IMG/VR virus record: IMGVR_UViG_3300032245_001746
Location: 255,858 to 319,857 of that record
Direction: 5' to 3' (one strand)
DNA length: 64,000 nucleotides
Part shown: in pieces, positions 5,207-62,162 of the stretch
How positions within the stretch are numbered: the stretch's first letter is position 1
How the letters are laid out: every line of letters begins with the position of its first letter
Translations under genes and position numbers: made by a program
The notes under the pieces: model-generated
Told to the model about the DNA's origin: nothing
The model's database searches: none
What the model saw: only the letters and a program-made list of their open reading frames with translations

Positions 5207-5551
5207 CAGCATGGAACCAAAAGTGTAATGAAATTACTGCAAATTACTTAATAAAAAATTTTGTAACAATTTTTTTGTAATACCCCCATGTTAATTTTAA
5301 CTCATTTACCTATTACAGATTATGTTATAATTAATCATTAAACAATTTTGTAACAATTAATAATTAAATTTGAGTTGAAAACCCTACAAAATAAAAAACA
5401 ATTTTTAATTGAAAATAAAATGACCGGGTGATAGCTGGTAAGAGGGGTATGCCCTACCAAACTTTTTTAAAGTTTTTTCAAATTAATTTCTTTATTTTTA
5501 ATTTTGCAACAATTTATTGTACAATCAAACTTCCTGTTAAGAAAATGTTAA

Positions 5552-5581
5552 GAAAGGACTGGCACCATTTCCAGTCCTTTC
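5552..5581 (-). terminator. Hairpin ending the cassette array
   Basis: GAAAGGACTGG/CCAGTCCTTTC 11-bp stem. Confidence 0.7.
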
Positions 5582-5602
5582 AAACTTCGTCAACCACCTA
5601 GA

Positions 5603-5878
5603 TCAACAACGTTTGGCAAGTTTGATGTCGACCTCGTTCGTTCGAACCCAATGATCGTAGATCTCATTACCAGCCAGTTCGATGATCAGGTCTCGCGTCT
5701 TGCCATACAATCCCTGAGAGCTTGCATCGTATGACACGAGCCATTCTTCTGCGGGTTCAGGAGAGTCGGCAGTGTTGCATACTGCAATCAATCCGAAAAG
5801 TTGAATGATTCTTCTTGCATAATCATTCAATTCGGTCTCACCATCACGATAAACAACGAGAACAGAAGGCTTTGACAT
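5603..5878 (-). CDS. Hypothetical protein
   Basis: AAGGA RBS, start trimmed to MSKPSV. Confidence 0.8.
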   Translation of the reverse strand: MSKPSVLVVYRDGETELNDYARRIIQLFGLIAVCNTADSPEPAEEWLVSYDASSQGLYGKTRDLIIELAGNEIYDHWVRTNEVDIKLAKRC

Positions 5879-5928
5879 TGTTATTCCTTTGACAAGAAGT
5901 GTTTGACTTACAACAGGATATTGTACAA

Positions 5929-6174
5929 TCAAACTAGGATGTCCCAGGTCTCACAAAGCGAATCAATTGCTTCGTTAATGGTCAGAACCATTGTCAACCA
6001 GTCATCGAAATCGAGAAGTCTTCCGACCAGAGTCTCAGCCTCCGAATAAAGCTGAGACTCTGCGAATTTCAACTGATCCACTAACTGAACAGCCGTATCG
6101 TATTCAGTACAGCGTTCTGCTTCGAACAGAACAGAGATCAGATGTGTTATCTCGTTTTTGATTGATGCTATCAT
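5929..6174 (-). CDS. Hypothetical protein
   Basis: AGGAG RBS; TGA stop lies inside the repeat. Confidence 0.8.
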   Translation of the reverse strand: MIASIKNEITHLISVLFEAERCTEYDTAVQLVDQLKFAESQLYSEAETLVGRLLDFDDWLTMVLTINEAIDSLCETWDILV

Positions 6175-6206
6175 TTGTTTTCTCCTGATAGCATCAGATT
6201 GTACAA

Positions 6207-6446
6207 TCAAACTGGAATGCTGTTGTACTCTTCAACGGCAAGTGAAAACGACGTGAATCGTTTTGGTTCCTCGTCATTGTGTTGCACCACATAATTGACG
6301 TGATCAAGTCGAGACTTATCGCAATAGTAGGGCTTCACAACAACAACCAGGGATTTTTTCCCAATTCCAGAAACCGCACAGGATGCGATTGTTGTTGAGA
6401 CTTCTTGATCCTTCGTGCTTTCCAGATCGATTTCGTGTTTTCTCAT
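6207..6446 (-). CDS. Hypothetical protein
   Basis: GGAG RBS; stop inside the repeat. Confidence 0.8.
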   Translation of the reverse strand: MRKHEIDLESTKDQEVSTTIASCAVSGIGKKSLVVVVKPYYCDKSRLDHVNYVVQHNDEEPKRFTSFSLAVEEYNSIPV

Positions 6447-6503
6447 TGTTTTCTCCAAGTTTGTGGCTGACAACGAGATATTGTACAATCAAACTTGATG
6501 GTT

Positions 6504-6686
6504 CTACTTGGAAAAATAGAACCCAAACAAGCACACAACCGCAATTCCAAATGAAATGATCATTGCAGATCGAATCAGGAAAATCATTCCTTCGCCGCCA
6601 AAATGATTTGGGTTGGTTTCTTTATGCATTTTGACAGCGAGAGCCATCAAAAACAAGTTAAAGATGAAAATGAAGACGTAGATCAC
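6504..6686 (-). CDS. Small two-TM membrane protein
   Basis: AGGAG RBS, GTG start. Confidence 0.75.
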   Translation of the reverse strand: MIYVFIFIFNLFLMALAVKMHKETNPNHFGGEGMIFLIRSAMIISFGIAVVCLFGFYFSK

Positions 6687-6756
6687 TTGTTTTCTCCTGT
6701 TGTTTGTTTCTCGTATCGTTGTATTGTACAATCAAACTTGTTGATTTGTGAATAAA

Positions 6757-6787
6757 AAAACGGGGATAATTTAATTATCCCCGTTTT
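6757..6787 (-). terminator. Intrinsic terminator
   Basis: AAAACGGGGATAAT/ATTATCCCCGTTTT stem with U-tract. Confidence 0.85.
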
Positions 6788-6869
6788 ACAACACGACTAC
6801 GTATGGAACATTTATGTCAGCTTAAAGCTGCGTTTTGTTTTTGGGTCCAATCGAGTCGGGTGTTGTATC
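6787..6869 (-). ncRNA. Candidate small structured RNA, copy A
   Basis: ORF-free promoter-to-terminator unit, near-identical to 10359-10441, ends base-pair. Confidence 0.65.
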
Positions 6870-6890
6870 GTTGAATTGTACAATCAAACT

Positions 6891-7148
6891 TCAATCGATT
6901 TTGAATTCTGATCCGTCTGGAAGTTCAACTTTTGTGACATTTGGAATAAGTCCTTGTTCGCGACTGTCAAACAGTGCGGAACGCAGATCTTGTTCGTTTG
7001 GATTTGGCCAATGAATTGAGTTTGCTCCCTCAGTATGAGAGATCAAAATACAAACTCCATCGTCTTCGTAATGAGCCTTCATCAATTCGTCGACGATATC
7101 GTCTTCAGAAGTGTAAAGTGTTCCGTCGATTGCAATTAATCGCACCAT
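6891..7148 (-). CDS. Acidic hypothetical protein
   Basis: AAGGA RBS. Confidence 0.8.
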   Translation of the reverse strand: MVRLIAIDGTLYTSEDDIVDELMKAHYEDDGVCILISHTEGANSIHWPNPNEQDLRSALFDSREQGLIPNVTKVELPDGSEFKID

Positions 7149-7204
7149 TGATCGTTTCCTTTGAGGTTGACGTGTTTTGTATCAATGGATTGTACAATCA
7201 AACT

Positions 7205-7402
7205 TCAGTCAACAATCCAGACAATTTTGCCAGTGCCTTTAACAAAAGCAACCTCTTTGCCATCCTGTTTCACACATACGGGGCATCCGTCCATGCTATT
7301 TTCGGCGGTTCGAAGTCCGTCCTGAACGCATTTTTCAACAGCTTTACGATCAGGCAGATTATTCGTTGGATGTGTGGTTCCGTTGTAATGCACTGAATAC
7401 AT
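7205..7402 (-). CDS. Hypothetical protein
   Basis: Start trimmed to MYSVH. Confidence 0.75.
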   Translation of the reverse strand: MYSVHYNGTTHPTNNLPDRKAVEKCVQDGLRTAENSMDGCPVCVKQDGKEVAFVKGTGKIVWIVD

Positions 7403-7459
7403 TGCGTTTTCCCCTGGATTACCTGTGATTGTTCTGAGAGGGGATTGTACAATCAAACT

Positions 7460-7783
7460 TCAATCCCAACTTACAAGGTCCCAGCGAACCTCACCTGTAT
7501 CTCGCAGGATTTCGAGCATTTGAATTGCTTGCAATGGAGTGGCTTGTTCTACTTTTCCACACATGTATCCATTAAATTCTGGATAAACGACACGTTCAGA
7601 TTGTCTTACAGGCACACCCGTGAAGTCGGCAAACAAATCAGGACTTATGAAATGTTCGTATTGCGGTTTGCAGACGGTTCGAATATGTCCAGCAATACAA
7701 CGTTCAAGACTCCACATGTCAAATGAGTCTTCATTAACATTCTTCAAAATGTCAATGGCTTTTTGCACATTTGGATAGATCAT
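7460..7783 (-). CDS. Hypothetical protein
   Basis: Start trimmed to MIYPNV. Confidence 0.8.
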   Translation of the reverse strand: MIYPNVQKAIDILKNVNEDSFDMWSLERCIAGHIRTVCKPQYEHFISPDLFADFTGVPVRQSERVVYPEFNGYMCGKVEQATPLQAIQMLEILRDTGEVRWDLVSWD

Positions 7784-7861
7784 TTGCTCATTCCGTTTTG
7801 TTTGGGGCTGATATCGATATCGGTTCATTGTACAATCAAAATTCATTGATTAAGTACAAGA

Positions 7862-7899
7862 GAAAACGGCAAAGATGGCGTACATCCCTACCGTTTTTC
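7862..7899 (-). terminator. Intrinsic terminator
   Basis: AAAACGG...CCGTTTT imperfect stem. Confidence 0.65.
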
Positions 7900-7922
7900 A
7901 GTTCTAAAGTTTGGGAGCTTGA

Positions 7923-7994
7923 TCAAACTGAAGAACGATTTCGATTTCGAATTTTTCGCAGGACGATTCCTGTCAGCAGGAACAATGAAATCAT
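7923..7994 (-). CDS. 23-aa hydrophobic/basic peptide MISLFLLTGIVLRKIRNRNRSSV
   Basis: GGAG RBS, own promoter at 8033; below ORF-track cutoff. Confidence 0.55.
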   Translation of the reverse strand: MISLFLLTGIVLRKIRNRNRSSV

Positions 7995-8065
7995 TTGTTT
8001 ACTCCGTTCGGGTGAAGGGCTGATACGGTTACATTGTACAATCAAACTTAATTAATTAAGTATAA

Positions 8066-8104
8066 GAAAAAACGAATGAGGTTCTTACTCTCATTCGTTT
8101 TTTC
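8066..8104 (-). terminator. Intrinsic terminator
   Basis: GAAAAAACGAATGAG/CTCATTCGTTTTTTC. Confidence 0.85.
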
Positions 8105-8266
8105 TTTTTTTCATAGAGGAGACTATGCGGCGTAGATTAGTCTCTCAGCACTCTTATTTCCCTGCAACATTTGGGTTGACCATCACCAAAATTAGGTCTT
8201 GTTGTTTAAGTACAACAAGCAAAACTAATTATTTTGTAGTACATCAACTCATTGTACAATCAAACT

Positions 8267-8458
8267 TCAACCGCCAATACTCCAATGAGATGGCTTTGTT
8301 GGTTTTTGAATGGTCACATATCGTCTTCCATCAACAATTCTGATGGTTTTGACACTTCCATCTGGCAATCTCACCGTTCCAGATCCATTCGAACAACGAG
8401 TTTGTGTGTCATGTCTGTCATGTGTGTCGTAATAGCCACCATATAGGTTTTTGCTCAT
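8267..8458 (-). CDS. Hypothetical protein
   Basis: AAGGA RBS. Confidence 0.75.
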   Translation of the reverse strand: MSKNLYGGYYDTHDRHDTQTRCSNGSGTVRLPDGSVKTIRIVDGRRYVTIQKPTKPSHWSIGG

Positions 8459-8517
8459 GTTTGTTTCCTTCTGACATCGTCATATTGTACAATCAAACTT
8501 CATTGATTAAGTATAAG

Positions 8518-8547
8518 AAAAAACAGGAATGTTTCATTCCTGTTTTT
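8518..8547 (-). terminator. Intrinsic terminator
   Basis: AAAAACAGGAATG/CATTCCTGTTTTT. Confidence 0.85.
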
Positions 8548-8652
8548 AGCGATTTTTGGATAAAATTAGTGTTTTACTCGTTACTTATACAGTAGTATAT
8601 ACTAACGTGGTATACCTTTGTATAAGAACATCGCCAAACGCTCTACACTAAT
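8548..8652 (-). ncRNA. Candidate pseudoknotted RNA motif, copy 1 of 3
   Basis: Conserved with 24954-25039 and 25529-25606, with covarying stems. Confidence 0.7.
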
Positions 8653-8696
8653 CCAGCTTTATCAATACCCTAAAGCTGGAAATCGGGATAAATTAG

Positions 8697-8769
8697 TGGT
8701 GCCGGTGGGAATCGAACCCACGACCATCGGATTAAAAGTCCGGTGCTCTACCAACTGAGCTACGACACC
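8697..8769 (-). tRNA. tRNA-Lys(UUU), no encoded CCA
   Basis: GGTGTCG/CGGCACC acceptor, CTTTTAA anticodon loop, GTTCGATTC T-loop. Confidence 0.95.
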
Positions 8770-8795
8770 AATACTGTCAGATTGTACAATCAAAC

Positions 8796-9035
8796 TTACC
8801 AGCCGTAATCGGATGGATCGAAACAAGACATGTCTGGATCTGTATCTAGTTCCAGATCTAAATCCTCATCCAGATATTCATCCAAATAGCTGTCATTACA
8901 GCAACCACATGGACAATACTGATCATATTCCAGATAGGAAAAATACAGATCTTCCAATTCGAGTTCTTCACGAACTTGTTCTTCTCTTTCGAGACGTTGT
9001 TCTTCGTTGAATTTTGCTACCAGGTTTTTTGACAT
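8796..9035 (-). CDS. Very acidic small protein with CPCGCC motif
   Basis: AGGAG RBS; about 25 D/E in 79 aa. Confidence 0.8.
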   Translation of the reverse strand: MSKNLVAKFNEEQRLEREEQVREELELEDLYFSYLEYDQYCPCGCCNDSYLDEYLDEDLDLELDTDPDMSCFDPSDYGW

Positions 9036-9069
9036 TGTTGTTCTCCTGAAGCAGGATTGTACAATCAAA

Positions 9070-9363
9070 CTAAATCATAGCAGCATTTCGAGCCGCACAT
9101 TTTCGTGCATAGTGCAATGATGGAGAATCACGTTTCAGTACAATTAAACCCTTTTTCTGAGTTTCATACATCCAGGTAACGCAGATTGCCTGGTTGACTT
9201 CTCCATTCTGATTTTCAATTTCCACTTCAGTTTCGCCAACAGGAATTTCTTCCTGTTCTTTCATGGTGGGAATGTCGTATCCCATGAAATCATTGGCTAA
9301 CGCATGGAAATAAATCCATGATACTGTGTTTTTTGGAAACGCATCGTAATGAAACAATCGCAT
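9070..9363 (-). CDS. Hypothetical protein
   Basis: TAG stop overlaps the repeat. Confidence 0.8.
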   Translation of the reverse strand: MRLFHYDAFPKNTVSWIYFHALANDFMGYDIPTMKEQEEIPVGETEVEIENQNGEVNQAICVTWMYETQKKGLIVLKRDSPSLHYARKCAARNAAMI

Positions 9364-9376
9364 TTGATTTGATCCT

Positions 9377-9440
9377 ATAGGTGGATATTACAGCAAGGTG
9401 TTTCACCTTTGTGTCTTATTTTGCTGTAATATCCACCTAT
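9377..9440. repeat. Perfect 20-bp inverted repeat in a 5' leader
   Basis: ATAGGTGGATATTACAGCAA / TTGCTGTAATATCCACCTAT, 24-nt loop. Confidence 0.9.
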
Positions 9441-9460
9441 CATCAGATTGTACAATCAAA

Positions 9461-9772
9461 CTAAGTGGTATCCCAATTTTCTTTCCAGAAAAGTGGCCAG
9501 GATTCTTCTGAATACCACGCTTCCCCCCACGATGGAGAGTCGTTTTCGTTGACTTCTTTCACTTTATCAGGATATTTTTCACATGCCTGATCAAATGAAA
9601 TTGATGTTTCATAAACGGCATCGTGCCATTTCATGGTTTGATGATCGATTTTGTTTCCAGGCAGAACCTTAGAACCGTTCGGAAAATAATATCCTCCCGG
9701 CTTGACTTCTGTCATTGCATCAGTCAATTCCTTTTCAGGATAACTACCTTGAGGCACAAGCAGAATTTTCAT
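9461..9772 (-). CDS. Hypothetical protein
   Basis: AAGGA RBS; stop overlaps the repeat. Confidence 0.8.
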   Translation of the reverse strand: MKILLVPQGSYPEKELTDAMTEVKPGGYYFPNGSKVLPGNKIDHQTMKWHDAVYETSISFDQACEKYPDKVKEVNENDSPSWGEAWYSEESWPLFWKENWDTT

Positions 9773-9818
9773 TGTGTATTCCTTGTGAAGTGATAAATCT
9801 CAATTGTACAATCAAACT

Positions 9819-9983
9819 TCATCGATCGGACTGATCTGGACCGTTTCCATATGGACCAACATATTTTGTTGATTCTGGTTTAGAAACGGGATCTGTCAAA
9901 GCTACACCGTTGCCGTATGGACCAACGTAATCAGATTTTTTCTTTTCGTCAACCTGAACGTCGATTTTAATTGTGATTGTCAT
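9819..9983 (-). CDS. Small protein with duplicated YVGPYGNG octapeptide
   Basis: Start trimmed to MTITIK. Confidence 0.7.
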   Translation of the reverse strand: MTITIKIDVQVDEKKKSDYVGPYGNGVALTDPVSKPESTKYVGPYGNGPDQSDR

Positions 9984-10048
9984 GATTGTTCTCTTTGAGA
10001 TTGTGATATCACTACATTGTACAATCAAACTTCATTGATTAAGTACGA

Positions 10049-10084
10049 CAAAAAATGCATGGATTTATTTCCATGCATTTTTTG
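10049..10084 (-). terminator. Intrinsic terminator
   Basis: CAAAAAATGCATGGA/TCCATGCATTTTTTG. Confidence 0.85.
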
Positions 10085-10326
10085 TTTTTCAATATAGGAG
10101 AAGAAATCAGATTTCAGGGGGAGCACGATTATTAATCATGGATGTGTCCAATATTGGATCGGGCTGCGGCGAATATTAGAGATGAAAAGAAAGAAATTTA
10201 TGTTTTAGGTCATGTCCTCATGGTAGTTTCTCCTTGACTAGTGGTTTTTGTTTTAGTTAAGTTTAACTTTTCTAACGTTCGTTGCATCGCAACATTGTAC
10301 AATCAAACTTCATTGATTAAGTACAT

Positions 10327-10359
10327 AAAAAAACAGAGATAAATTAATATCTCTGTTTT
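10327..10359 (-). terminator. Intrinsic terminator
   Basis: AAAACAGAGAT/ATCTCTGTTTT. Confidence 0.85.
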
Positions 10360-10441
10360 ACAACACGACTACGTATGGAACATTTATGTCAGCTTATTTG
10401 CTGGTATTGTTTTTGGGTCCAATCGAGTCGGGTGTTGTATC
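10359..10441 (-). ncRNA. Candidate small structured RNA, copy B
   Basis: Duplicate of 6787-6869 with its own promoter and terminator. Confidence 0.65.
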
Positions 10442-10461
10442 AATGGATTGTACAATCAAAC

Positions 10462-10638
10462 TCACTTCGTGAAGCTCAAAAGTGAAGCTACAAATCCAAC
10501 AAAACACCACAAAATCAACCAAATATGAGCCAATTTGATTGAAATTGGCAGTTTTTCTTTTTCTACCCAATGACCAATTGAGATGAAAATCACGAGAGAA
10601 GTCACCAACATTGCAAAAATAGCTTGGAATGTTGTCAT
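10462..10638 (-). CDS. Small two-TM membrane protein
   Basis: AAGGA RBS, MTTFQ start. Confidence 0.75.
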   Translation of the reverse strand: MTTFQAIFAMLVTSLVIFISIGHWVEKEKLPISIKLAHIWLILWCFVGFVASLLSFTK

Positions 10639-10713
10639 GTTTGTTTCCTTGTTTGATTTTTGATTCACTTCGATATCGGTTCATTGTACAATCAAACTTT
10701 TTATTGTTTTAAC

Positions 10714-10744
10714 AAAAAAAACAGGGATATTTCTATCCCTGTTT
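10714..10744 (-). terminator. Intrinsic terminator
   Basis: AAACAGGGATA/TATCCCTGTTT. Confidence 0.85.
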
Positions 10745-10769
10745 AATCGATTCTCTGAGATTTCTCAGA

Positions 10770-11180
10770 TTATGCAGCTTCTGCCGTTGTCGTCGGTTCC
10801 AGAACAACAGTTTCGACGGTTTCTTCTGCCGTTTCCGTTGTTTCGAGGACAACAGTTTCAGTTTCTTCGTCCGTTGGCAGTTCGACGTTCAGGTGTTCGC
10901 AGATCAGTTCGAGCATATCTGCGTTCTTGTCCGTCTTCGCGTCAACAATCGTGTCGATCAGAGAGGTAACAATTGTTCCCTTGAGGAACTGGAGAAGATA
11001 GTAACAGGCGAGTTCTGCGTCAGAACCCTGTTCCAGTGTCGCCATGAACTTGGCAAATACTTTTGCCATTGTCTTGTCGATTGTGCCGCCCTGTGAGTTC
11101 TTATTCTTAGAACCCTTCGGGCGTCCACGTCCACGCTTAGGAGCTTCGACGTTTACAGTTGTTTCGGCTGAATTTCCCAC
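10770..11180 (-). CDS. AT-hook protein with acidic C-terminal tail
   Basis: PKRGRGRPKGSKNKNS motif; E/T-rich tail. Confidence 0.8.
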   Translation of the reverse strand: MGNSAETTVNVEAPKRGRGRPKGSKNKNSQGGTIDKTMAKVFAKFMATLEQGSDAELACYYLLQFLKGTIVTSLIDTIVDAKTDKNADMLELICEHLNVELPTDEETETVVLETTETAEETVETVVLEPTTTAEAA

Positions 11181-11366
11181 GGCAGTAACCCTTTCAGAAT
11201 TGTTTTTGACTTGTCAACACCGTTGTTGACATCGTCATATTGTACAATCAAACTTCAAAGCCCTTCTCAACTTAGAGAAGGAAGTTTGACCTGACTCTTC
11301 CGAGTCATCTTTGAGTCATCCTTATGAGGAATCATTGTACAATCAAACTTAATTGATTTAAGGAAT

Positions 11367-11397
11367 AAAAAAAGCAGAGATGTATTATCTCTGCTTT
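11367..11397 (-). terminator. Intrinsic terminator after tRNA-Arg
   Basis: AAAGCAGAGAT/ATCTCTGCTTT. Confidence 0.85.
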
Positions 11398-11405
11398 ATA
11401 ATAAA

Positions 11406-11479
11406 TGTCCCCATCAGGGATCGAACCTGAAACCTACTGCTTAGAAGGCAGTTGCTCTATCCAATTGAGCTACGAGGAC
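11406..11479 (-). tRNA. tRNA-Arg(UCU), no CCA
   Basis: ACTGC-CTTCTAA-GCAGT anticodon arm; GTCCTCG/TGGGGAC acceptor. Confidence 0.92.
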
Positions 11480-11483
11480 AAAA

Positions 11484-11623
11484 GAAACAGACCGATTCAG
11501 CATTTCACTATCAATCAGGTGATACGCCCTTACTGGAACTGATATCCAATATTGAATATCAAAAGACGTTTTAAAGTGAAATTTTTTATTAATCCAGTTT
11601 ATCAGAATTGCTCAGTCTGTTTC
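11484..11623 (-). ncRNA. Candidate multi-stem RNA co-transcribed ahead of tRNA-Arg
   Basis: Nested stems plus a 7-bp pseudoknot, no ORF. Confidence 0.55.
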
Positions 11624-54438: not shown

Positions 54439-54440
54439 TA

Positions 54441-55789: not shown

Positions 55790-55836
55790 GATTGTGCTTT
55801 CTACAAAAATTTTAGAAAATTGTATTTTGTCTGTTT

Positions 55837-56082
55837 TCAGATAATAGAAATTGCCAACACTTCATTTGCTTGTGGAGAATAATCATCTGCTTTATCTCCA
55901 ACGATTGTGCCACACATATCAATGTAAACCACATTTAACATATTTACTTCATCAATAAACTGAACATCTTTTGAATCATTATCATTTTGATGAAGACCAA
56001 TATATGTGTTTTCGCCATATTTTTCAATTAACAAATTGACTGCATCTCTTAGAGTTCTAAGAGTGTTGAAATTATAGTGCAT
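55837..56082 (-). CDS. Hypothetical protein
   Basis: ORF on coding strand. Confidence 0.7.
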   Translation of the reverse strand: MHYNFNTLRTLRDAVNLLIEKYGENTYIGLHQNDNDSKDVQFIDEVNMLNVVYIDMCGTIVGDKADDYSPQANEVLAISII

Positions 56083-56223
56083 GTTTTTGATCTTTCAATT
56101 TTTGAAGAATAGTCAATTCGCTATATGTGAATAAAAAATATAAATGATGACCGTTTTCGGTAAACAAAATGGCATCAGCAGGAGAAACATGTTTATCTAA
56201 TGTTTGAATTAAATCTCTAATTT

Positions 56224-56772
56224 TCATGATGCAATTTTTTCTAATTCTTGAATTCTTAAATTAAAATCATCTAACAATTTTTGAAAATTAAAAGTTTTAG
56301 ATAATCTTTCAACATGTTTGGCAAGATAATATAAAGCTTTTTTATCTGAATGATTATTAAATGAATATTTGTAATAACAAAATGCTGGAAGCCACACGGC
56401 AGATTTAACTAATTCCTGAGCAGAATCGTTCAAATTAAAATGTTTTTCAGCAGATAGTTGAAATGCCCAAACTCTAGCTTCTCGTTTTACCTGATCTGAT
56501 GTTTGTGGTTCATATCCCCAACTTGTTCCAACTTGCCAGAATTTACCATAATAAAATCCCCAATTTCTTGATGGGAATTTTTTCAATCGTCTGATATCTA
56601 ATTCAGCAAAATGGCATATTTCGTGAAATAAATTAGATAAATTTAAACTTGGACCAGCAGCCGCACCAACAAAATAAGACTTTTCTTCACAAATTTGTCC
56701 TTCCATTTTACTTCTTAGTTGAAAAATGGGGCTTTGAAAGAATGTCTTTTTTATTTCATGTGCAATCGACAT
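56224..56772 (-). CDS. HExxH protein (loose resemblance to EF-P hydroxylase EpmC family)
   Basis: LFHEICHF...RR...GY.P...Q...E...WAFQ. Confidence 0.45.
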   Translation of the reverse strand: MSIAHEIKKTFFQSPIFQLRSKMEGQICEEKSYFVGAAAGPSLNLSNLFHEICHFAELDIRRLKKFPSRNWGFYYGKFWQVGTSWGYEPQTSDQVKREARVWAFQLSAEKHFNLNDSAQELVKSAVWLPAFCYYKYSFNNHSDKKALYYLAKHVERLSKTFNFQKLLDDFNLRIQELEKIAS

Positions 56773-56912
56773 TGTTTTCTTTCAATTTCTAAGTTAACAT
56801 AAAATTCTTTTCCATTAATCATGGAAATACATGTTTTAGTTATGTAAATGCCATCATGGGGATCAAGAGTTTAGTTATTGAAGAAATGTGATAGATATTA
56901 ATAACACCAGAT

Positions 56913-57362
56913 TCAACATGAATGAACAGAGGTTTTTGATTTGTCATAATCATTTTGGTTTTTTCTTTCCTTTAAAGGAAAAATTGCTTCACCCCAAGAT
57001 TGACCTGCATCTTGATTCATTTGAACTGGATTTAAATAGTAAAAATTAAAAGAAGTTTCTCCAAAATCAGCAAGCAATGCCGAAATTGTTTTATCGCTTT
57101 TCATTTCATAATCATCATCCCAACCCATATTTTGTAAAGCCTGACCAAAAATGCATCCTTTGCATTCTGGACCAAGAATTATATTTACATTTGATTTGGA
57201 TTTTGCTGATCCATTATAATAACATTGAGCATCTAGTTTTCGATAGGCTGTATTGTAAATAAAATCGGGATTTTCTGTTCCCAACTTAATTACTTCTGCA
57301 TTTAATGAATCAGCAAATTCATTAACAGATGAATGTTTCCCAATAACTTCTTTTAAATTCAT
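56913..57362 (-). CDS. Family A protein
   Basis: Paralog motif. Confidence 0.9.
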   Translation of the reverse strand: MNLKEVIGKHSSVNEFADSLNAEVIKLGTENPDFIYNTAYRKLDAQCYYNGSAKSKSNVNIILGPECKGCIFGQALQNMGWDDDYEMKSDKTISALLADFGETSFNFYYLNPVQMNQDAGQSWGEAIFPLKERKNQNDYDKSKTSVHSC

Positions 57363-57388
57363 TTTTTTCTCCAATTAATATTATGTAA

Positions 57389-57730
57389 TTACCAATTATA
57401 TTTTTGAAATGAATCAACTTTGTATGCATCTGCATCGAATTCAATTATAACGGCAGATACTGAATTTGCGTATTCAATAATTGGTTTAAACCAATCAGGA
57501 GTGTCTTCTGTCATATCTGTTACCCAAACGATCCAGCCATATTCAGATTCAACAACGCGATATGATCCAAATTTTGGTGCCGGTCCTGGAACGTGGACTG
57601 TTGATAATTGCAACATATTATTCACAATACGTTCTTGGTGTCCACAATTGTTGCAATATCCGTTAGCATCACAACTCATTAAATGAGTTCCAAACATCGT
57701 ACATTGTTCAATATTTGAATGGTTAGGCAT
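57389..57730 (-). CDS. Hypothetical protein with N-terminal Cys/His cluster
   Basis: HLMSCD..GYCNNCGH. Confidence 0.7.
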   Translation of the reverse strand: MPNHSNIEQCTMFGTHLMSCDANGYCNNCGHQERIVNNMLQLSTVHVPGPAPKFGSYRVVESEYGWIVWVTDMTEDTPDWFKPIIEYANSVSAVIIEFDADAYKVDSFQKYNW

Positions 57731-57796
57731 TTGAGTTCCTTAAATTAAACAAATAAATTTTAATTTTTTTGATTCTTATGTAAGTTCATTGTACAA

Positions 57797-58405
57797 TCAA
57801 ACTTTTGAATATGTTTCACGTTTTGTTATTTCATATCCATTTTCATCATATGTTGATTCAGAAAAATATCCACTTGAATTTTTGTGTGTCAACCGACATC
57901 CATTGTGATCATATGTTGATTCAGAAAAATATCCATTTGAATCCTTATAGTTAAGAAGAGAACCATTTTCATTGTGTGTTTGTTCATACGAAAATCCTCT
58001 GGAATGTTTGTATGTCGACACATTGCCATTTTTGTCATATGTATATTCATACCAATATCCATAAGAATCTTTACATCTAAACAATTTACCATTTTCATTA
58101 TAAATTCTATGACATCCAATTAATTGAATTAATTCATCTGGATCATTAATTTCTCGAATAATTCTTATCTTGTCTGTACAAGATTTATCATTTTCTTCAA
58201 TTGTGAATAAACCTAAATCTTCAATTTCCAATAATTTGAATCGCCTTGTATATGAATAATGTTTCAATGTATTTCTAGCATTTTTGCAATAATGAAATCC
58301 ACGTGAACACATAATTGGCTTTTCTGACAATTCATAAGTTTGACCAATTTCAAATTTAAAATCGCGACAAACAAAATCGTAGGTAGCTTTATATCCAATT
58401 TTCAT
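57797..58405 (-). CDS. Family B protein with 24-aa tandem repeats
   Basis: Paralog motifs; SSGYFSESTYD repeats 72 bp apart; stop in the repeat. Confidence 0.9.
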   Translation of the reverse strand: MKIGYKATYDFVCRDFKFEIGQTYELSEKPIMCSRGFHYCKNARNTLKHYSYTRRFKLLEIEDLGLFTIEENDKSCTDKIRIIREINDPDELIQLIGCHRIYNENGKLFRCKDSYGYWYEYTYDKNGNVSTYKHSRGFSYEQTHNENGSLLNYKDSNGYFSESTYDHNGCRLTHKNSSGYFSESTYDENGYEITKRETYSKV

Positions 58406-58444
58406 TTTATTATTTTCTATTTTAAATGTAAAAAGTTATTTAAC

Positions 58445-58633
58445 TTATGATGCTAAAAAATAGCAAATTGCAAAATAAACAGCCCAGATGAAACCAATGG
58501 GTATAAGCCAAAAAAACCTATAAATTGATCCAAAATCATAATGACTTGTTCTATGATAAGGTCTAAACAACATAATTAAACAGAACAATGTTGCAGCGAT
58601 TGGAATAAAGATTGCATTAATTGTAATTGACAT
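58445..58633 (-). CDS. Two-TM membrane protein
   Basis: Hydrophobic. Confidence 0.75.
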   Translation of the reverse strand: MSITINAIFIPIAATLFCLIMLFRPYHRTSHYDFGSIYRFFWLIPIGFIWAVYFAICYFLAS

Positions 58634-58643
58634 AAATTTTTTT

Positions 58644-59042
58644 CTAAGAAATTAGTTCACTAATAGATTTTTTCCAAGATCCACCTAAATCCTGGCAAGC
58701 CTGAGTTCGTCTGAACTTTTCAAGCAAATCCTGATATTTTATTTCATAATTAAGAATTAAAGTATTTAAATACGTGTCAATTCTAAGTGACATTCCTAAT
58801 TCATCATAATTATTGCATCCCATATTTTGTAGGGCTTGACCGAAAATACAACCATTACATTTTGGACCTACAATAGATCCTATTTTGTTTTTTGCTGGAC
58901 CGTAGTATGTACAAAATCCTTCTCTATTAGGATTATAAACAAAATCAGGATTGCTTGTTCCTAATTTAATTACTTCTTGCTTTAAAGCTTCAAGAAATTC
59001 AAGTTTTGAATTAAACTTATTGCAAATATCAATTAACTTCAT
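58644..59042 (-). CDS. Family A protein
   Basis: Paralog motif (CNGCIFGQAL); start trimmed to MKLID. Confidence 0.9.
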   Translation of the reverse strand: MKLIDICNKFNSKLEFLEALKQEVIKLGTSNPDFVYNPNREGFCTYYGPAKNKIGSIVGPKCNGCIFGQALQNMGCNNYDELGMSLRIDTYLNTLILNYEIKYQDLLEKFRRTQACQDLGGSWKKSISELIS

Positions 59043-59076
59043 CGTTATTAATCTTTTCTTGAATAGGACATTATAA

Positions 59077-59376
59077 CTAGAAATTTGTAACACACAAATT
59101 GTGTCGTTCAATCTTTTTTGATAAAAGCAAACAGATTTTGTCCAATAAGACAAAATCTGTTTTTTCTTTTGAATTTAAAGAGGCACATTCAATATTAAAT
59201 GCACAGTTTGAATTCATAACACAATTAATACGAAATAATTGTTTTCCATATCTGAATTGATAATAAAAATTCTTAGAACGCAAATTTAATATTCCAAAAA
59301 TTTTAGGATTGGAATATCCACTTATCAATAAAGTATCTTTTTCTCGTATCCAATTGTACAATGTTATTAAATTCAT
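59077..59376 (-). CDS. Hypothetical protein
   Basis: Coupled to the 576-aa gene. Confidence 0.65.
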   Translation of the reverse strand: MNLITLYNWIREKDTLLISGYSNPKIFGILNLRSKNFYYQFRYGKQLFRINCVMNSNCAFNIECASLNSKEKTDFVLLDKICLLLSKKIERHNLCVTNF

Positions 59377-61106
59377 TATTGCTCCTTGAATAAATTAACA
59401 AATGTATCCTTGTTTACTTTATTCACAGATAAATCAATATCTGCTTCGGCTACATCAGAAACAATTTCTGCTCCAGCATCTGATAAAATTGTTTTCAAAC
59501 CGACTTGAAACAATGAGTTTTCAACTAATGCAGTTAATCCATTAGCCTTAGATGAAACTCTAGCATTTCCACTTCCGCCATTTACTACTACAAAATAATT
59601 AGATCCCAATATTCCCAGCGTTGTTTGTTTCTGAGAAGAAACTACATATTCATCAATAATAACATTATTTGGGTCCATTAAATATTGTTTTGAAATATCT
59701 TCTCCATCTCCAACAATTAACTTAAATTTAGTGTTTTCTTGACCATAGAATATATTTGCTGTAACTAAACTAAATTGATCACCACGATTATTATCGCAAT
59801 GAATGTATTCTACAGCACCATTAACTGCATTCGTAATATCTCCACTGTATGTTAATCCATTTCTCGTCCATGATGAATTCCATCCCACCTTAGAATTATT
59901 AATATCCATTGATGACAAATCAATATCATGAGCACCCCAACTATTTTCCCAATAAATCCCAACTACAAGTCGTTTGCCATAAATTTTAGTGCCCACAGGT
60001 ATATTGCCAACAAACATTTTTTCCGAAGTTGGCAACGCATAATCTACATTAGATGGAATATAGATTCGCTTACCAGAAAGATTAAATCTCTTGCGTAGAT
60101 ATTGTGTTAAAAATGAATAATTATTCAGACACACATCTGTATTTGGATTGGTATTGTTTTCAACAAATGTTTTTCCATTTCTTACTCTATAACTAAAGCT
60201 TTTTTGACCATTAACACGTGTAGCAACAGCGTTAATAGCTTTAAATAAAGAAAAAATTGTTGCATTATCAAGCCAATGAATATCATTTTCAGTAAGTTTA
60301 GTTGTTGTTACACAATTTAAAGCATTTACTGGAATAGGTTTGTGATACTTCTTAGATAGTTTTGACAACTTGTTGATTAATGCTGGACAAAAAGATTTCA
60401 TTGCCAAAAACAATGGTTTATATCGATTGAAAATCGATGATACTTTGTCCAATCCAAATCGTTCAAACAATTCGGTTGGATCATAATATGATTTCTTCAT
60501 TAATTCAATTGATGATTGATTAACAATAAGAAGTGTAGAACCAGTTTTCTTAAAAAACACATAACGAAATAAATCCATCACATTACTTGGAACAATTCCG
60601 TATCGGTCCATAATACGAATTGTTGCTTCTTTATTTTTGACGGAAAAACCATCATTAAACTTAACATTTAACTCTTGCAATAAATCAAGAATTAAATTAA
60701 TTGTTTCTTCTTTGAGTGCCAATCCAGAATTGAGCATGTTCATACATTTATTTTTCAATTCTTCAGAGGTACACGCTTTAATCACACGTACTTTTAATTT
60801 TTGATCAGGAATATTATGAACTTCTTCTGGAATATACATTTCTCCCTCGAACATATTTCCATATGTCGAAATGTAATGCAAAACTTGATCCATCAATCGC
60901 TTTAGTGTATCACCAGAACTTGCAAATGATTTGTAAAATCCTGCATTCAATTGCTTTGGTGTCAAATTTTTAGAATTGAAATATGTTTCAACTGCTCTTT
61001 GTGCATAAAGAGTATTTGGCATAAATACATAGCCATCGTTATTTACGATAATATCTTTGTTTGATTCTTTTGCCAAAACAACACCAAATAATTCAAGGCT
61101 TTTCAT
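59376..61106 (-). CDS. 576-aa protein with helical N-terminal region and TerD-like C-terminal domain
   Basis: GIYW...DIDLS...VGWN...YSGDIT.A..GA.EYI resembles TerD-type beta-sandwich motifs. Confidence 0.6.
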   Translation of the reverse strand: MKSLELFGVVLAKESNKDIIVNNDGYVFMPNTLYAQRAVETYFNSKNLTPKQLNAGFYKSFASSGDTLKRLMDQVLHYISTYGNMFEGEMYIPEEVHNIPDQKLKVRVIKACTSEELKNKCMNMLNSGLALKEETINLILDLLQELNVKFNDGFSVKNKEATIRIMDRYGIVPSNVMDLFRYVFFKKTGSTLLIVNQSSIELMKKSYYDPTELFERFGLDKVSSIFNRYKPLFLAMKSFCPALINKLSKLSKKYHKPIPVNALNCVTTTKLTENDIHWLDNATIFSLFKAINAVATRVNGQKSFSYRVRNGKTFVENNTNPNTDVCLNNYSFLTQYLRKRFNLSGKRIYIPSNVDYALPTSEKMFVGNIPVGTKIYGKRLVVGIYWENSWGAHDIDLSSMDINNSKVGWNSSWTRNGLTYSGDITNAVNGAVEYIHCDNNRGDQFSLVTANIFYGQENTKFKLIVGDGEDISKQYLMDPNNVIIDEYVVSSQKQTTLGILGSNYFVVVNGGSGNARVSSKANGLTALVENSLFQVGLKTILSDAGAEIVSDVAEADIDLSVNKVNKDTFVNLFKEQ

Positions 61107-61131
61107 GATTTTTCTTTTCTTTTTAAAAAAT

Positions 61132-61297
61132 GGGCGAGAAGTAATTGAATTTAGAAAATTTTTTTATAGGAACTTCTTTTGCCCTAAAACTAAAAGAGAC
61201 GAAGAGTAAATTGCATAGTCGTTTAATAGGAACTCTTTTTGTCTCAAATTAAGATGAAGAGTAATTTACCAAAAAAATAGGAACTCTTTTTATCTTA
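61132..61297 (-). ncRNA. Three tandem covarying hairpins in the 5' leader of the 576-aa gene
   Basis: Units 61132-61184, 61196-61245, 61250-61297. Confidence 0.75.
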
Positions 61298-61352
61298 ATC
61301 ATCTATCCATTGTACAACCAAACTTGATAAATGGTAACACTTTTTTTAGAAC

Positions 61353-61682
61353 TTACATGTTATCATTATTTTTTTTAATGAAATTTGATTCATCTAACAC
61401 GTGAATCATAATTACTACTAAATCATCAATTTTAAATTCATTTAATGGTGACGTACATAAACCACCACTCCAACTATCTGTTGATGCCCAATTTTCTCCA
61501 ATTATATCACACTTTTCATCACAAGATGAAAGTTTGACAGGTTTAATTTTTGCAAGTTTTAATAATTCTCCACTTTTATTATCATCGACATAACCAGAAC
61601 GATAAAGATGAGGAATCACACATTTGTTTATGTGTGCAATTATTTTCTTGCGTGCTTTTCTAATTGAAGAAATTTCGCTCAT
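61353..61682 (-). CDS. Hypothetical protein
   Basis: After tRNA-Lys. Confidence 0.75.
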   Translation of the reverse strand: MSEISSIRKARKKIIAHINKCVIPHLYRSGYVDDNKSGELLKLAKIKPVKLSSCDEKCDIIGENWASTDSWSGGLCTSPLNEFKIDDLVVIMIHVLDESNFIKKNNDNM

Positions 61683-61710
61683 AATTACTTTCTAAATCAA
61701 GTTAATGAAG

Positions 61711-61783
61711 TGGTGCCGGTGGGAATCGAACCCACGACCATTGGATTAAAAGTCCAGTGCTCTACCAACTGAGCTACAACACC
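61711..61783 (-). tRNA. tRNA-Lys(UUU), third copy, no CCA
   Basis: GGTGTTG/CGGCACC acceptor, CTTTTAA loop. Confidence 0.95.
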
Positions 61784-61802
61784 ATATTTAAACATTGTAC
61801 AA

Positions 61803-62162
61803 TCAAACTTCAAATTTACATAAATGTCTATATAATTCAATATTTATTAAAATTTGATGTACGTGAATATCATTTGCTACAATTTCTAATTTTTTAATTT
61901 CTTTAAGATAATAATTACATCTATATTCTGCCCATTTTTTGGGAGATAAATCAAAATTTTCTGGTTTGCGTTCCCACAGTTCTTTTGCTTTTTCTAAAGT
62001 AATTATTTCTCCAAATAGCCATCCAGTTTTTTTACCAACATTATTTTCAATAAATTTCTCAAATTCTTTTTGAATTTCTTTAGGTGTTGATTCATAATAT
62101 TTTTCAATACACGAAAGAATTCTTTGCTTTGTTACTTGTACATAACCTATTGGATTATTCAT
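61803..62162 (-). CDS. Hypothetical protein
   Basis: Ends FEV-TGA in the repeat. Confidence 0.75.
   Translation of the reverse strand: MNNPIGYVQVTKQRILSCIEKYYESTPKEIQKEFEKFIENNVGKKTGWLFGEIITLEKAKELWERKPENFDLSPKKWAEYRCNYYLKEIKKLEIVANDIHVHQILINIELYRHLCKFEV

What the first reader, a model, noticed from the sequence alone, without database searches (positions are those of the whole stretch)
5516..61809. Phage gene/RNA cassette array built on about 78 copies of one 16-bp palindrome-containing element
Seen: AGTTTGATTGTACAAT recurs about 78 times, always in the same orientation, separating single genes, tRNAs and ORF-free RNA units. It contains the perfect palindrome ATTGTACAAT. No shared -35 is evident, because the upstream side is often arbitrary coding sequence. 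The TACAAT hexamer ends 11-12 nt before three tRNA 5' ends (8769, 16149, 61783) and 6 nt before the duplicated sRNA, as expected for a sigma70-like -10. Known: T4-type phages shuffle early genes through repeated promoter/stem-loop (PeSL) cassettes, and integrons store cassettes between recombination sites. Inference: this is an unusually dense, self-promoting cassette library in which one element acts as both promoter and recombination junction, either by short-homology recombination or via a site-specific enzyme or regulator that reads the palindrome.
Basis: partly seen in the sequence, partly recalled or inferred. Interest (0 to 1): 0.92.

Follow-up and report, generated by a model that had tools for sequence, protein, structure and literature searches.

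The report
Invariant promoter repeat in a megaphage
A 16-base sequence repeated about 130 times on one strand of a roughly 530-kb phage genome is most likely the phage's own early-gene promoter, and close relatives have gained, lost and moved single genes exactly at these repeats, much as T4-type phages do at their promoter/terminator cassettes.

Summary
AGTTTGATTGTACAAT occurs 66 times exactly and 78 times with up to 2 mismatches, always on the minus strand, between 5516 and 61809; shuffles give none.

The window is the end of a 320-kb contig of a ~530-kb phage. The array continues beyond it: at least 131 copies (111 exact) on one strand, dense over ~160 kb, and no exact copy in the other ~260 kb of that contig.

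Each copy sits 20-50 nt before a Shine-Dalgarno sequence and start codon, 10-11 nt before three tRNAs, or at the head of ORF-free RNA units. About a fifth follow an intrinsic terminator, and 24 abut or overlap the upstream gene's stop codon. It has a -10-like TACAAT but no -35.

I read it as a phage-specific promoter. No polymerase or sigma gene was found in the roughly half of the genome I could read.

Three related metagenomic contigs (80-96% identical) differ by cassette gains, losses and transpositions. Of 37 homology-block ends, 22 lie within 10 nt of a copy (12.6% expected). This fits recombination between the repeats, as at T4-type PeSLs. Nothing supports an integron-like site-specific system.

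Verdict: a new variant of a known kind, of moderate interest.

The parts
5516..61809 (-). Array of 78 copies of AGTTTGATTGTACAAT (66 exact, 12 with 1-2 mismatches). Plus-strand start coordinates: 5516, 5920, 6198, 6480, 6723, 6875, 7189, 7444, 7827, 8033, 8251, 8484, 8781, 9056, 9447, 9803, 10016, 10294, 10447, 10683, 11239, 11334, 11633, 11933, 12321, 12556, 12774, 13161, 13538, 13800, 14121, 14666, 14901, 15268, 15451, 16160, 16397, 16725, 17325, 17996, 18420, 18771, 19375, 20070, 20797, 21316, 22229, 22514, 23946, 24892, 25301, 25457, 26213, 26298, 27023, 27474, 29129, 29565, 31010, 32251, 32893, 35702, 37720, 38444, 39478, 41465, 42858, 43733, 44505, 45737, 46497, 48502, 51531, 52561, 54736, 57788, 61309, 61794
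   Evidence: logo
5516..20085 (-). Dense zone of mostly one gene, tRNA or ORF-free RNA per promoter copy. Units are 85-710 bp, GC is 0.34-0.41, and the proteins are ORFans.
20086..61809 (-). Sparser zone with units of 0.4-3.5 kb holding one to several genes per promoter copy.
8696..8769 (-). tRNA-Lys(UUU) whose 5' end lies 12 nt after the last T of a motif copy.
16064..16149 (-). tRNA-Leu(UAA) whose 5' end lies 11 nt after a motif copy.
61710..61783 (-). tRNA-Lys(UUU) whose 5' end lies 11 nt after a motif copy.
10310..10446 (-). ORF-free unit behind a motif copy. It has a structured body of about 80 nt plus its own terminator (candidate sRNA, copy 1).
6739..6874 (-). Second copy of the same ORF-free unit. 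The duplication runs exactly from one motif copy to the next.
6757..6787 (-). Example of an intrinsic terminator (14-bp stem plus T-run) about 20 nt upstream of a motif copy. Others of the same kind are at 8519-8547, 10330-10359, 10719-10744, 11371-11397, 12359-12376, 13198-13231 and 24927-24953.
6891..7204 (-). Single-gene cassette present here and in JACCEA011394453 but absent from ERZ724522 NODE-341. The deletion endpoints lie in the two flanking motif copies.
   Evidence: example A
41089..41480 (-). Unit (83-aa gene plus tRNA-Lys) that in ERZ724522 NODE-341 sits next to the 8.2-8.8 kb region. Its left junction is at the motif and its right junction lies inside the tRNA-Lys repeat.
   Evidence: example D
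14901..15283 (-). Cassette whose position relative to its neighbours differs in the relative (order 14681, 15283, 14136). Both junctions are at motif copies.
   Evidence: examples C1, C2

Best explanation
The 16-mer (extended consensus A-AGTTTGATTGTACAAT-G) is the promoter of the early or non-structural gene block of a ~530-kb tailed phage.

Inferred steps:
- TACAAT acts as a -10-type element.
- The invariant AGTTTGATTG just upstream replaces a -35 as the specificity determinant.
- Transcription starts 6-9 nt downstream, at a conserved T-purine.

What reads it is unresolved. My estimate is about 0.55 for a host-type multisubunit polymerase with a sigma-70-family factor, possibly phage-encoded or phage-modified. 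I give about 0.3 to a phage-encoded polymerase.

Because about 130 near-identical copies lie in direct orientation, often with a shared terminator and spacer, they also serve as substrates for homology-driven recombination. That recombination deletes, duplicates, inserts and transposes promoter-gene units. This second role is shown comparatively. The enzyme responsible is inferred to be the general recombination machinery, not a dedicated site-specific one.
For: Position and orientation:
- 78 of 78 copies in the window, and 131 of 131 in the genome, are on the coding strand.
- The median distance from motif end to an SD-preceded start codon is 37 nt (per-unit table).
- Three tRNAs start 10-11 nt after the motif.
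- 22 of 78 copies follow a hairpin plus T-run within 80 nt, against 7.8% of random positions. Terminator-like sites number 42 against 10.7 +/- 3.8 in shuffles. After such terminators the motif is the only conserved element before the next gene.

Start-site geometry:
- T at offset 23 in 86 of 131 copies (pyrimidine in 107) and a purine at offset 24 in 117 of 131. This also holds in the three tRNA units.
- In the duplicated ORF-free RNA, the 5 nt after the motif vary among five copies. Everything from offset 21 onward is invariant.
- SD sequences begin at offset 22 or later in all but three copies.

Distribution:
- All 66 exact copies in the 320-kb contig lie in its last 58.5 kb.
- Structural genes (tape measure protein, gp2-like end protector) lie outside the array on the other side of a strand switch.

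Selection on the motif:
- 46 of 50 copies in relatives are exact, although the flanks are only 80-96% identical. Neutral retention of a 16-mer would be 13-19%.

Recombination:
- 22 of 37 homology-block ends lie within 10 nt of a copy, against 12.6% for random positions (binomial 2e-11).
- At individual junctions the 50 nt upstream match one window unit (49/50) and the 50 nt downstream match another (47/50).
- The only young intragenomic duplicate runs exactly from motif to motif.

Precedent:
- PeSL-mediated shuffling in T4-type phages (PMC2839356, PMC4122927).
- Conserved early-promoter motifs in jumbo phages (PMC7598289).
Against: - No transcription start has been mapped, so the promoter role is inferred from position.
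- There is no -35 and no canonical extended -10; the TG abuts the hexamer. A host primary sigma alone is therefore not an obvious reader.
- No RNA polymerase, sigma, MotA/AsiA-like or other dedicated reader was found. I checked the Pfam tables of about 165 kb of array and ran my own scans of about 110 proteins. About half of the genome could not be read.
- A perfect 10-bp palindrome is unusual for a simple promoter and may mean a dimeric protein also binds it.
- Block ends come in pairs at junctions and alignments run through identical repeats, so the binomial p overstates independence.
- Selection for intact promoter-gene units could by itself enrich for breakpoints near promoters.
- Most intragenomic paralogues are old, and their homology ends at gene borders rather than at the motif.
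Confidence: 0.75

Rival explanations
1. Integron-like cassette system. The palindrome would be the core of a recombination site cut and rejoined by a dedicated site-specific recombinase, and cassettes would move as excised circles.
For: Cassette-level indels and transpositions have endpoints at the element. The element contains a perfect 10-bp palindrome. One duplicate runs exactly from motif to motif.
Against: - No integrase or recombinase family appears in the Pfam tables of any walked locus or in the window proteins scanned. The only mobile-element gene is one TnpB.
- The element is an invariant 16-mer, not a 57-141-bp imperfect inverted repeat.
- Every cassette has its own promoter.
- One junction lies in a repeated tRNA-Lys rather than at the motif (example D). 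Another crossover lies in shared sequence 5-12 nt beyond the motif (example A). Both are as expected for homology-driven exchange.
Confidence: 0.05
2. The element acts at the RNA level, as a processing site, stabiliser or translation signal within long read-through transcripts. It would not be a start signal.
For: About a third of copies abut or overlap the upstream stop codon with no terminator between genes, so read-through RNA must contain the motif. Phages such as T7 and T4 do process early polycistronic RNA.
Against: - Copies sit about 20 nt after strong intrinsic terminators, where little RNA would arrive.
- As RNA the palindrome can form only a 3-4-bp AU-rich stem.
- No fixed-register covariation or structure follows the motif. 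A hairpin pile-up seen in the window did not replicate in 34 other copies.
- The -10-like hexamer and the T-purine 8-9 nt downstream fit DNA-level initiation.
Confidence: 0.07
3. The palindromic half is also, or mainly, an operator. A dimeric phage or host DNA-binding protein would sit on ATTGTACAAT at every promoter and switch the whole block on or off together. This is compatible with the promoter role.
For: The chance of a 10-bp perfect palindrome at a given site is about 1 in 1000, and here it overlaps the -10. It is invariant in 131 copies. Unrelated metagenomic contigs carry the same palindrome inside longer symmetric sites, as operators would be. TGTACA-core palindromes are known operators of YefM-type antitoxins (PMC1802561, listed). 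One early-region protein matches a PHROG 'DNA binding protein' family.
Against: No candidate binding protein was tied to the site. The asymmetric upstream AGTTTG is equally invariant, so recognition is not purely symmetric.
Confidence: 0.25
4. Strand-specific genome-architecture signal unrelated to transcription, such as a Chi-like, KOPS-like, packaging or replication signal.
For: Strict single-strand polarity over more than 160 kb.
Against: Such signals are not positioned relative to genes. Here the copies are almost always 20-50 nt before a start codon, tRNA or RNA unit, and often exactly at the upstream stop codon. They are absent from the structural half of the genome.
Confidence: 0.03

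Closest known systems
PeSL (promoter-early stem-loop) cassettes of T4-type phages (Arbiol et al. 2010, PMC2839356; Comeau et al. 2014, PMC4122927)
   Same: - A repeated early promoter, often joined to a stem-loop terminator, lies immediately upstream of ORFan genes in a plastic region.
- The stop codon of the upstream gene and the SD/start of the downstream gene are part of the unit.
- Indels, replacements and transpositions between close relatives have their endpoints in the repeats.
- The phage also has T4-like early genes (rIIA, RNA ligases, PNK, gp2-like protein).
   Different: - PeSLs carry a full sigma-70 consensus (-35, -10, upstream AT tract) and are degenerate; about 50 occur per 170-kb genome. 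Here there is no -35.
- Here a 16-18-bp block is essentially invariant (111 of 131 exact) and contains a 10-bp palindrome.
- The stem-loop accompanies only about a fifth of copies.
- The element also drives long operons, tRNAs and RNA units across at least 160 kb of a ~530-kb genome.
- Mini-circles were not tested.
Early promoters of RNAP-encoding jumbo phages (phiKZ, AR9), read by the virion RNA polymerase (Sokolova et al. 2020, PMC7598289)
   Same: A phage-specific, AT-rich, highly conserved motif without a -35 lies just upstream of the start site of many early operons and can be found by bioinformatics alone.
   Different: Those motifs are about 10 nt long and centred near -10. Those phages carry recognisable split beta/beta' genes. 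No such gene was found in the half of this genome that could be read, and the gene content leans T4-like rather than phiKZ-like.
T4 middle promoters (sigma-70 -10 element plus MotA box, with AsiA/MotA sigma appropriation)
   Same: A host-type -10 hexamer combined with a phage-specific upstream box that replaces the -35. It drives non-structural genes and tRNAs.
   Different: The MotA box is centred at -30, about 12 bp from the -10. Here the box abuts the -10. No MotA or AsiA homologue was detected.
T7-group class II/III promoters (single-subunit RNA polymerase)
   Same: A near-invariant 17-23-bp promoter is repeated before individual genes. G is the commonest base right after the conserved block (74 of 131).
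   Different: No single-subunit polymerase gene was seen. The conservation pattern downstream (T-purine at offsets 23-24, RNA conservation starting at offset 21) places the start 6-9 nt after the block, not at its edge.
Integron attC cassette arrays
   Same: Tandem single-gene cassettes are separated by a repeated, partly palindromic element in one orientation.
   Different: There is no integrase, no attI/Pc, and no attC architecture. The cassettes carry their own promoters. The junctions fit homologous rather than site-specific exchange.

Membership tests
PeSL (T4-type promoter-early stem-loop) | Sigma-70 consensus early promoter with -35, -10 and an upstream AT-rich tract | tested here: not met
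   Only a -10-like TACAAT is present. Offsets -40 to -5 carry almost no information. A consensus scan finds no more sites than shuffles do.
PeSL (T4-type promoter-early stem-loop) | Stem-loop terminator or attenuator as part of the repeated unit | tested here: inconclusive
   Present upstream of 22 of 78 copies. About 14 of these are strong, with the T-run starting 19-24 nt before the motif and a shared spacer. It is absent from the majority, where the motif abuts the upstream stop codon.
PeSL (T4-type promoter-early stem-loop) | Concentrated in plastic regions, immediately upstream of ORFans | tested here: met
   The dense zone at 5.5-20 kb has one small gene per copy. Ten of ten cassette proteins tested have no significant PHROG match (one borderline hit, E=0.0044). 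The ORFs are kept in relatives, with 79 synonymous against 92 non-synonymous codon differences.
PeSL (T4-type promoter-early stem-loop) | Indel or replacement endpoints between close relatives lie in the repeats | tested here: met
   22 of 37 block ends lie within 10 nt of a copy, against 12.6% expected.
PeSL (T4-type promoter-early stem-loop) | Formation of excised mini-circles between neighbouring repeats | not testable with these tools
   Needs reads or PCR across circular junctions.
PeSL (T4-type promoter-early stem-loop) | Host genome is a T4-type myovirus | tested here: inconclusive
   T4-like genes are present: an rIIA homologue (E=3e-115), a gp2-like end protector (E=8e-5), RNA ligases, PNK and a Dda/RecD-like helicase. 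Capsid, polymerase and gp55/gp33 genes were not reached.
Integron | IntI tyrosine recombinase with attI and Pc next to the array | tested here: not met
   No integrase family appears in any gene table of the walked loci or in the window scans. About half of the genome is unread.
Integron | attC sites: 57-141-bp imperfect inverted repeats with paired R/L boxes | tested here: not met
   The element is an invariant 16-mer with a 10-bp perfect palindrome, and its flanks are not conserved.
Integron | Promoterless cassettes expressed from a common Pc | tested here: not met
   Every cassette is preceded by the promoter-like element, and many are closed by their own terminator.
Jumbo-phage vRNAP early promoter | Phage encodes split multisubunit beta/beta'-like RNA polymerases | tested here: inconclusive
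   None was seen in roughly 260 kb read (Pfam tables). The rest of the genome is unread.
Jumbo-phage vRNAP early promoter | Conserved AT-rich motif centred near -10 upstream of early operons, without a -35 | tested here: inconclusive
   The motif is AT-rich (12 of 16 bases) and lacks a -35. With the inferred start at offsets 21-24 its centre lies at about -13 to -16. The start is inferred, not mapped.
Bacterial sigma-70 promoter | -10 hexamer close to TATAAT, with a start 6-9 nt downstream | tested here: met
   TACAAT matches 5 of 6 and is invariant. T-purine is conserved at offsets 23-24. RNA conservation starts at offset 21. The start itself is inferred.
Bacterial sigma-70 promoter | -35 hexamer at 16-18 bp, or TGn extended -10 | tested here: not met
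   Nothing is conserved at the -35 position. The TG directly abuts the hexamer instead of lying one base away.
T7-type promoter | Single-subunit RNA polymerase gene, and a start at the 3' edge of the conserved block | tested here: inconclusive
   No such gene was found in the sequence read. G follows the block in 74 of 131 copies, but the other signals place the start further downstream.
N4-type hairpin promoter | 5-7-bp stem with a 3-nt loop extruded at the promoter | tested here: not met
   The palindrome allows at most a 3-4-bp A/T-rich stem with a 2-4-nt loop (read directly from the sequence).

The most novel reading that the evidence does not exclude
The invariant 18-bp element would be read by a so far unrecognised phage factor: a sigma-like or appropriator protein, or a novel polymerase. 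Its specificity would include the 10-bp palindrome. One protein would then switch about 130 transcription units, a third or more of a 530-kb genome, on or off together. The same repeats would also make the early region a self-shuffling gene library.
Probability: 0.2. Interest if true: 0.75.

Novelty: new variant of a known kind. Interest (0 to 1): 0.5.

Why it matters
Huge phages are known almost only from metagenomes, and how they are transcribed is essentially unstudied. This is a clean sequence-level handle on one of them.

- A single invariant element marks about 130 transcription units and divides the genome into a block that carries it and a structural block that does not.
- Its lack of a -35 implies a recognition mechanism that is not the plain host sigma. 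That can be tested with a synthetic promoter.
- The comparative data extend promoter-repeat-mediated gene shuffling (PeSL) from classical T4-type phages to a ~530-kb phage. They show it acting at single-gene resolution among natural strains, which helps explain how such genomes collect hundreds of small ORFans.
- Practically, the motif is a precise marker for annotating early genes, small RNAs and operon starts in this lineage.

Tried and rejected
1. Megablast of 20 kb of the window against GenBank phages gave no match.
2. A literature search for the motif core found only unrelated operators. Searches for the sample accessions found nothing.
3. I first took IMG/VR contig 001763 for a diverged relative sharing the motif. 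Identical flanks in the ENA scaffold showed it is another piece of the same genome, so I withdrew the claim of conservation across diverged phages.
4. Fixed-register covariation for a hairpin after the motif: none. Hairpins starting at the motif's last base were enriched in the window (15 against 4.0 +/- 1.9) but not in 34 further copies. I dropped this as evidence for the start site.
5. Pfam and PHROG scans of about 110 proteins, plus the precomputed tables of ten 20-kb loci, showed no RNA polymerase, sigma, MotA/AsiA or integrase. A paralogue-based fetch returned only the window itself.
6. Distant relatives found through rIIA were nine IMG/VR contigs and the 595-kb record LR756511. None has a comparable invariant repeat near rIIA, and some show ordinary TTGACA-N17-TACAAT promoters.
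7. Intragenomic repeats are mostly old coding paralogues whose ends are unrelated to the motif.
8. GTAC is not avoided outside the motif (ratio 0.81), so a link to restriction or modification was not pursued.
9. Host inference from the glf gene points only weakly to gut Bacillota (about 50% identity).

Full report
OBSERVATION. The 16-mer AGTTTGATTGTACAAT occurs 66 times exactly in the window, always on the minus strand; none is expected in shuffled sequence. Allowing up to two mismatches gives 78 minus-strand copies and no plus-strand copy, from 5516-5531 to 61794-61809. The embedded palindrome ATTGTACAAT occurs 74 times against 0.27 expected, and never outside a copy.

WHERE THE WINDOW COMES FROM. 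A scan of IMG/VR shows that the window is the last 64 kb of a 319,857-bp viral contig. All 66 exact copies on that contig lie in its last 58.5 kb. The same phage is assembled as a 530,789-bp scaffold in an ENA metagenome, with 0.3% differences over 11 kb. I walked that scaffold in 10-kb steps. The copies continue upstream, in the sense of transcription, on the same strand. There are 40 more up to scaffold position 484,204 and at least 13 more on a 102-kb contig. I had first mistaken that contig for a different phage; it is a further piece of the same genome. In all, 131 distinct copies were collected and 111 of them are exact (and the tallies above). They are dense over about 160 kb and sparse beyond. 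At the downstream end the array stops at a strand switch. Past it lie converging genes: a RecD/Dda-like helicase with an intein, a CCA-adding enzyme, and then a tape measure protein of at least 1,548 aa with a gp2-like end protector. This is the structural module, and it carries no copies.

ANATOMY. Over 131 copies the 16 positions are 95-100% conserved. The consensus extends to A at -1 (107 of 131) and G at +16 (74 of 131). Nothing is conserved where a -35 would lie. A weaker block follows, with T at offset 23 (86 of 131, G in only 2) and a purine at offset 24 (117 of 131). An SD-preceded start codon follows at a median of 37 nt, and SD sequences begin at offset 22 or later in all but three copies. 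In 24 units the called gene's stop codon abuts or overlaps the next copy: TGA just before the motif, TAA or TAG using its first bases, or the TGA inside AGTT-TGA. This explains the weak 'TGA' signal upstream of the motif. In 22 of 78 cases a hairpin plus T-run lies within 80 nt upstream, against 7.8% of random positions. The strong ones have the T-run 19-24 nt before the motif and share a spacer. The tool scan finds 42 terminator-like sites in 20 kb against 10.7 +/- 3.8 in shuffles, but no excess of sigma-70-type promoters (79 against 66.9 +/- 9.8). From about 5.5 to 20 kb nearly every gene, tRNA or ORF-free RNA has its own copy, in units of 85-710 bp. Further on, units are operons of 0.4-3.5 kb.

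WHAT IT IS. The placement leaves a promoter as the only economical reading. The copies share the orientation of every gene, sit immediately before SD/ATG, tRNA 5' ends and RNA units, and follow strong terminators. They carry a -10-like hexamer and are confined to the non-structural block.

The start site is inferred from three independent hints. First, T-purine is conserved 8-9 nt after TACAAT, including in the three tRNA-leading units. Second, in the duplicated ORF-free RNA the five bases after the motif differ among five copies from three strains, while everything from offset 21 onward is identical. Third, there is a lower bound on where SD sequences begin. An apparent pile-up of hairpins starting at the last base of the motif did not replicate in 34 other copies, so I do not use it.

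The motif is under constraint. In the relatives 46 of 50 copies are exact, although the flanks are 80-96% identical; 13-19% would be expected neutrally. Gene conversion among copies could contribute to this.

WHO READS IT. This is unresolved. There is no -35, and the TG abuts the hexamer instead of forming TGn. A primary host sigma acting alone is therefore not an obvious reader.

The gene content seen leans T4-like. It includes an rIIA homologue (E=3e-115) directly behind a copy, RNA ligases, a PNK, ADP-ribosylation enzymes and a gp2-like protein. In the classification of Iyer et al. such phages lack their own polymerase but encode sigma factors (PMC7824862). On the other hand, jumbo phages that do carry polymerases are known for bioinformatically obvious, AT-rich, -35-less early motifs (PMC7598289).

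I found no polymerase, sigma, MotA/AsiA-like protein or integrase in about 260 kb read. I put about 0.55 on a host-type enzyme with a sigma-70-family factor, possibly phage-encoded or remodelled. I put about 0.3 on a phage polymerase. The 10-bp palindrome has a chance of about 1 in 1000 at a given site. It suggests that a dimeric protein may additionally bind there, which would be a natural way to switch all units together. This is untested.

RECOMBINATION JUNCTION. A metagenome scan for two cores 206-236 bp apart returned three true relatives among many unrelated hits. They are ERZ724522 NODE-341 (31 kb, 37 copies in the parts held) and two short JACCEA contigs. They match window 2,278-16,562 at 76-96% identity, but not colinearly.

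The differences are these:
- the cassette at 6891-7204 is missing from NODE-341 but present in a JACCEA contig;
- NODE-341 has an extra cassette, a 79% paralogue of the 11254 unit, inserted at the 6495 copy;
- NODE-341 and a JACCEA contig share an extra cassette at the 9071 copy;
- the 41480 unit sits next to the 8.2-8.8 kb region, with one junction at the motif and the other inside the repeated tRNA-Lys;
- cassettes 14681, 15283 and 14136 are in a different order.

Of 37 internal ends of homology blocks, 7 fall inside a copy, 22 within 10 nt and 27 within 30 nt. Random positions give 5.7%, 12.6% and 26% (binomial 2e-11 for the 10-nt class). The p value is overstated, because block ends pair up at junctions. 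At single junctions the upstream 50 nt match one window unit (49/50) and the downstream 50 nt another (47/50), with the switch inside the motif or the 12 nt after it. Within the genome, the only young duplicate (88% identical) runs exactly from copy to copy. The older paralogues do not.

The cassette ORFs are real genes. They stay open in the relative in 10 of 11 ungapped comparisons, and 79 of 171 differing codons are synonymous. They have no known families.

This is the behaviour described for PeSLs in T4-type phages (PMC2839356, PMC4122927). Shared sequence at the junctions, a junction in a tRNA repeat, and the absence of any recombinase all favour homology-driven exchange over a site-specific system.

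COMPARISON AND NOVELTY. The element works like a PeSL and like a phage-class promoter. It fails the PeSL definition on the sigma-70 -35/-10 consensus and only partly meets the stem-loop criterion. It fails every integron criterion. It cannot yet be placed among vRNAP, T7-type or sigma-appropriation promoters.

More distant relatives found through rIIA were nine IMG/VR contigs at 31-39% identity and the 595-kb record LR756511 at 34%. None shows a comparable invariant repeat around rIIA, and some have ordinary TTGACA-N17-TACAAT promoters. The element is therefore specific to this lineage. I rate it a new variant of a known kind. It is notable for its copy number, its invariance, the missing -35, the palindrome, and the size of the genome it organises.

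LIMITS. No transcription start, binding protein or excised circle has been observed. The host is unknown; a glf gene most resembles those of gut Lachnospiraceae at about 50% identity, and the strong SD usage argues against Bacteroidota. Only about half of the genome was read.

Noticed in passing
window 10310-10446 (-) and 6739-6874 (-): An ORF-free unit with its own promoter copy and terminator occurs twice. Its body of about 80 nt has a long stem and is identical in five copies from three strains, while the terminator stems and flanks vary. It is a candidate small RNA; Rfam has no match at gathering score.
   Followed up: partly
window 26229-26313 (-) and 11255-11349 (-): Two short (85-95 nt) ORF-free units sit between two promoter copies. 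Each carries small hairpins and precedes one of a pair of paralogous genes (146 and 136 aa).
   Followed up: no
window 32902-34566, 39487-39999, 50560-51117, 54761-55543, 57797-58405 (-), 344-769 (+); also L158, L300-L305: Large expansion of a DUF7666 paralogue family, often in tandem triplets: at least 8 copies in the window and more than 25 in the sequence walked. A second family (phrog_572) has 11 members among 40 window proteins.
   Followed up: no
whole window: GGCC and GCGC occur at 0.12 and 0.18 of their Markov expectation outside the motif. This suggests avoidance of HaeIII- and HhaI-type restriction sites. GTAC is not avoided.
   Followed up: no
window about 6000-20000: The dense single-gene cassette zone has GC 0.34-0.41, against 0.27-0.31 in the rest of the window.
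   Followed up: no
L302:7278-8366; L303:509-1297; L060:5231-7402: Selfish elements lie inside or beside the array: a TnpB (IS605 OrfB/Cas12f-like) gene, an HNH/NUMOD homing endonuclease, and a LAGLIDADG intein inside the RecD/Dda-like helicase.
   Followed up: no
L094, L099, L102, L123, L128 and similar loci (unrelated metagenome contigs): Low-GC contigs from other samples carry the same 10-bp palindrome inside a longer symmetric site (TTnnGG-ATTGTACAAT-CCnnAA), 4-7 times per ~10 kb. These may be operators of an unrelated element.
   Followed up: no
IMG/VR contigs 3300032245_001746 and _001763; JGI contig Ga0335278_1575701: Three JGI contigs (320, 102 and 82 kb) are pieces of one ~530-kb genome. 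IMG/VR lists two of them as separate viral genomes. At least one assembly break falls inside the promoter array.
   Followed up: yes
window 29078-29144 (-): A tandem duplication of a 22-nt 5'-UTR segment that includes the SD lies just after the promoter copy at 29129.
   Followed up: no
window 62155-62703 (-) and other window proteins of alignment A2: The early block encodes a NADAR domain protein, a Nudt16-like NUDIX (decapping-type) enzyme and a cREC_REC cyclic-phosphate-processing domain. PARP-like and ADP-ribosylglycohydrolase genes lie further upstream. Together these suggest RNA and ADP-ribose based host takeover or counter-defence.
   Followed up: no
one of 41 proteins of L301-L305 (alignment A3): One early-region protein matches PHROG 624 'DNA binding protein' (E=2e-31). 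I did not work out which member it is. It is a possible candidate for a palindrome reader.
   Followed up: no
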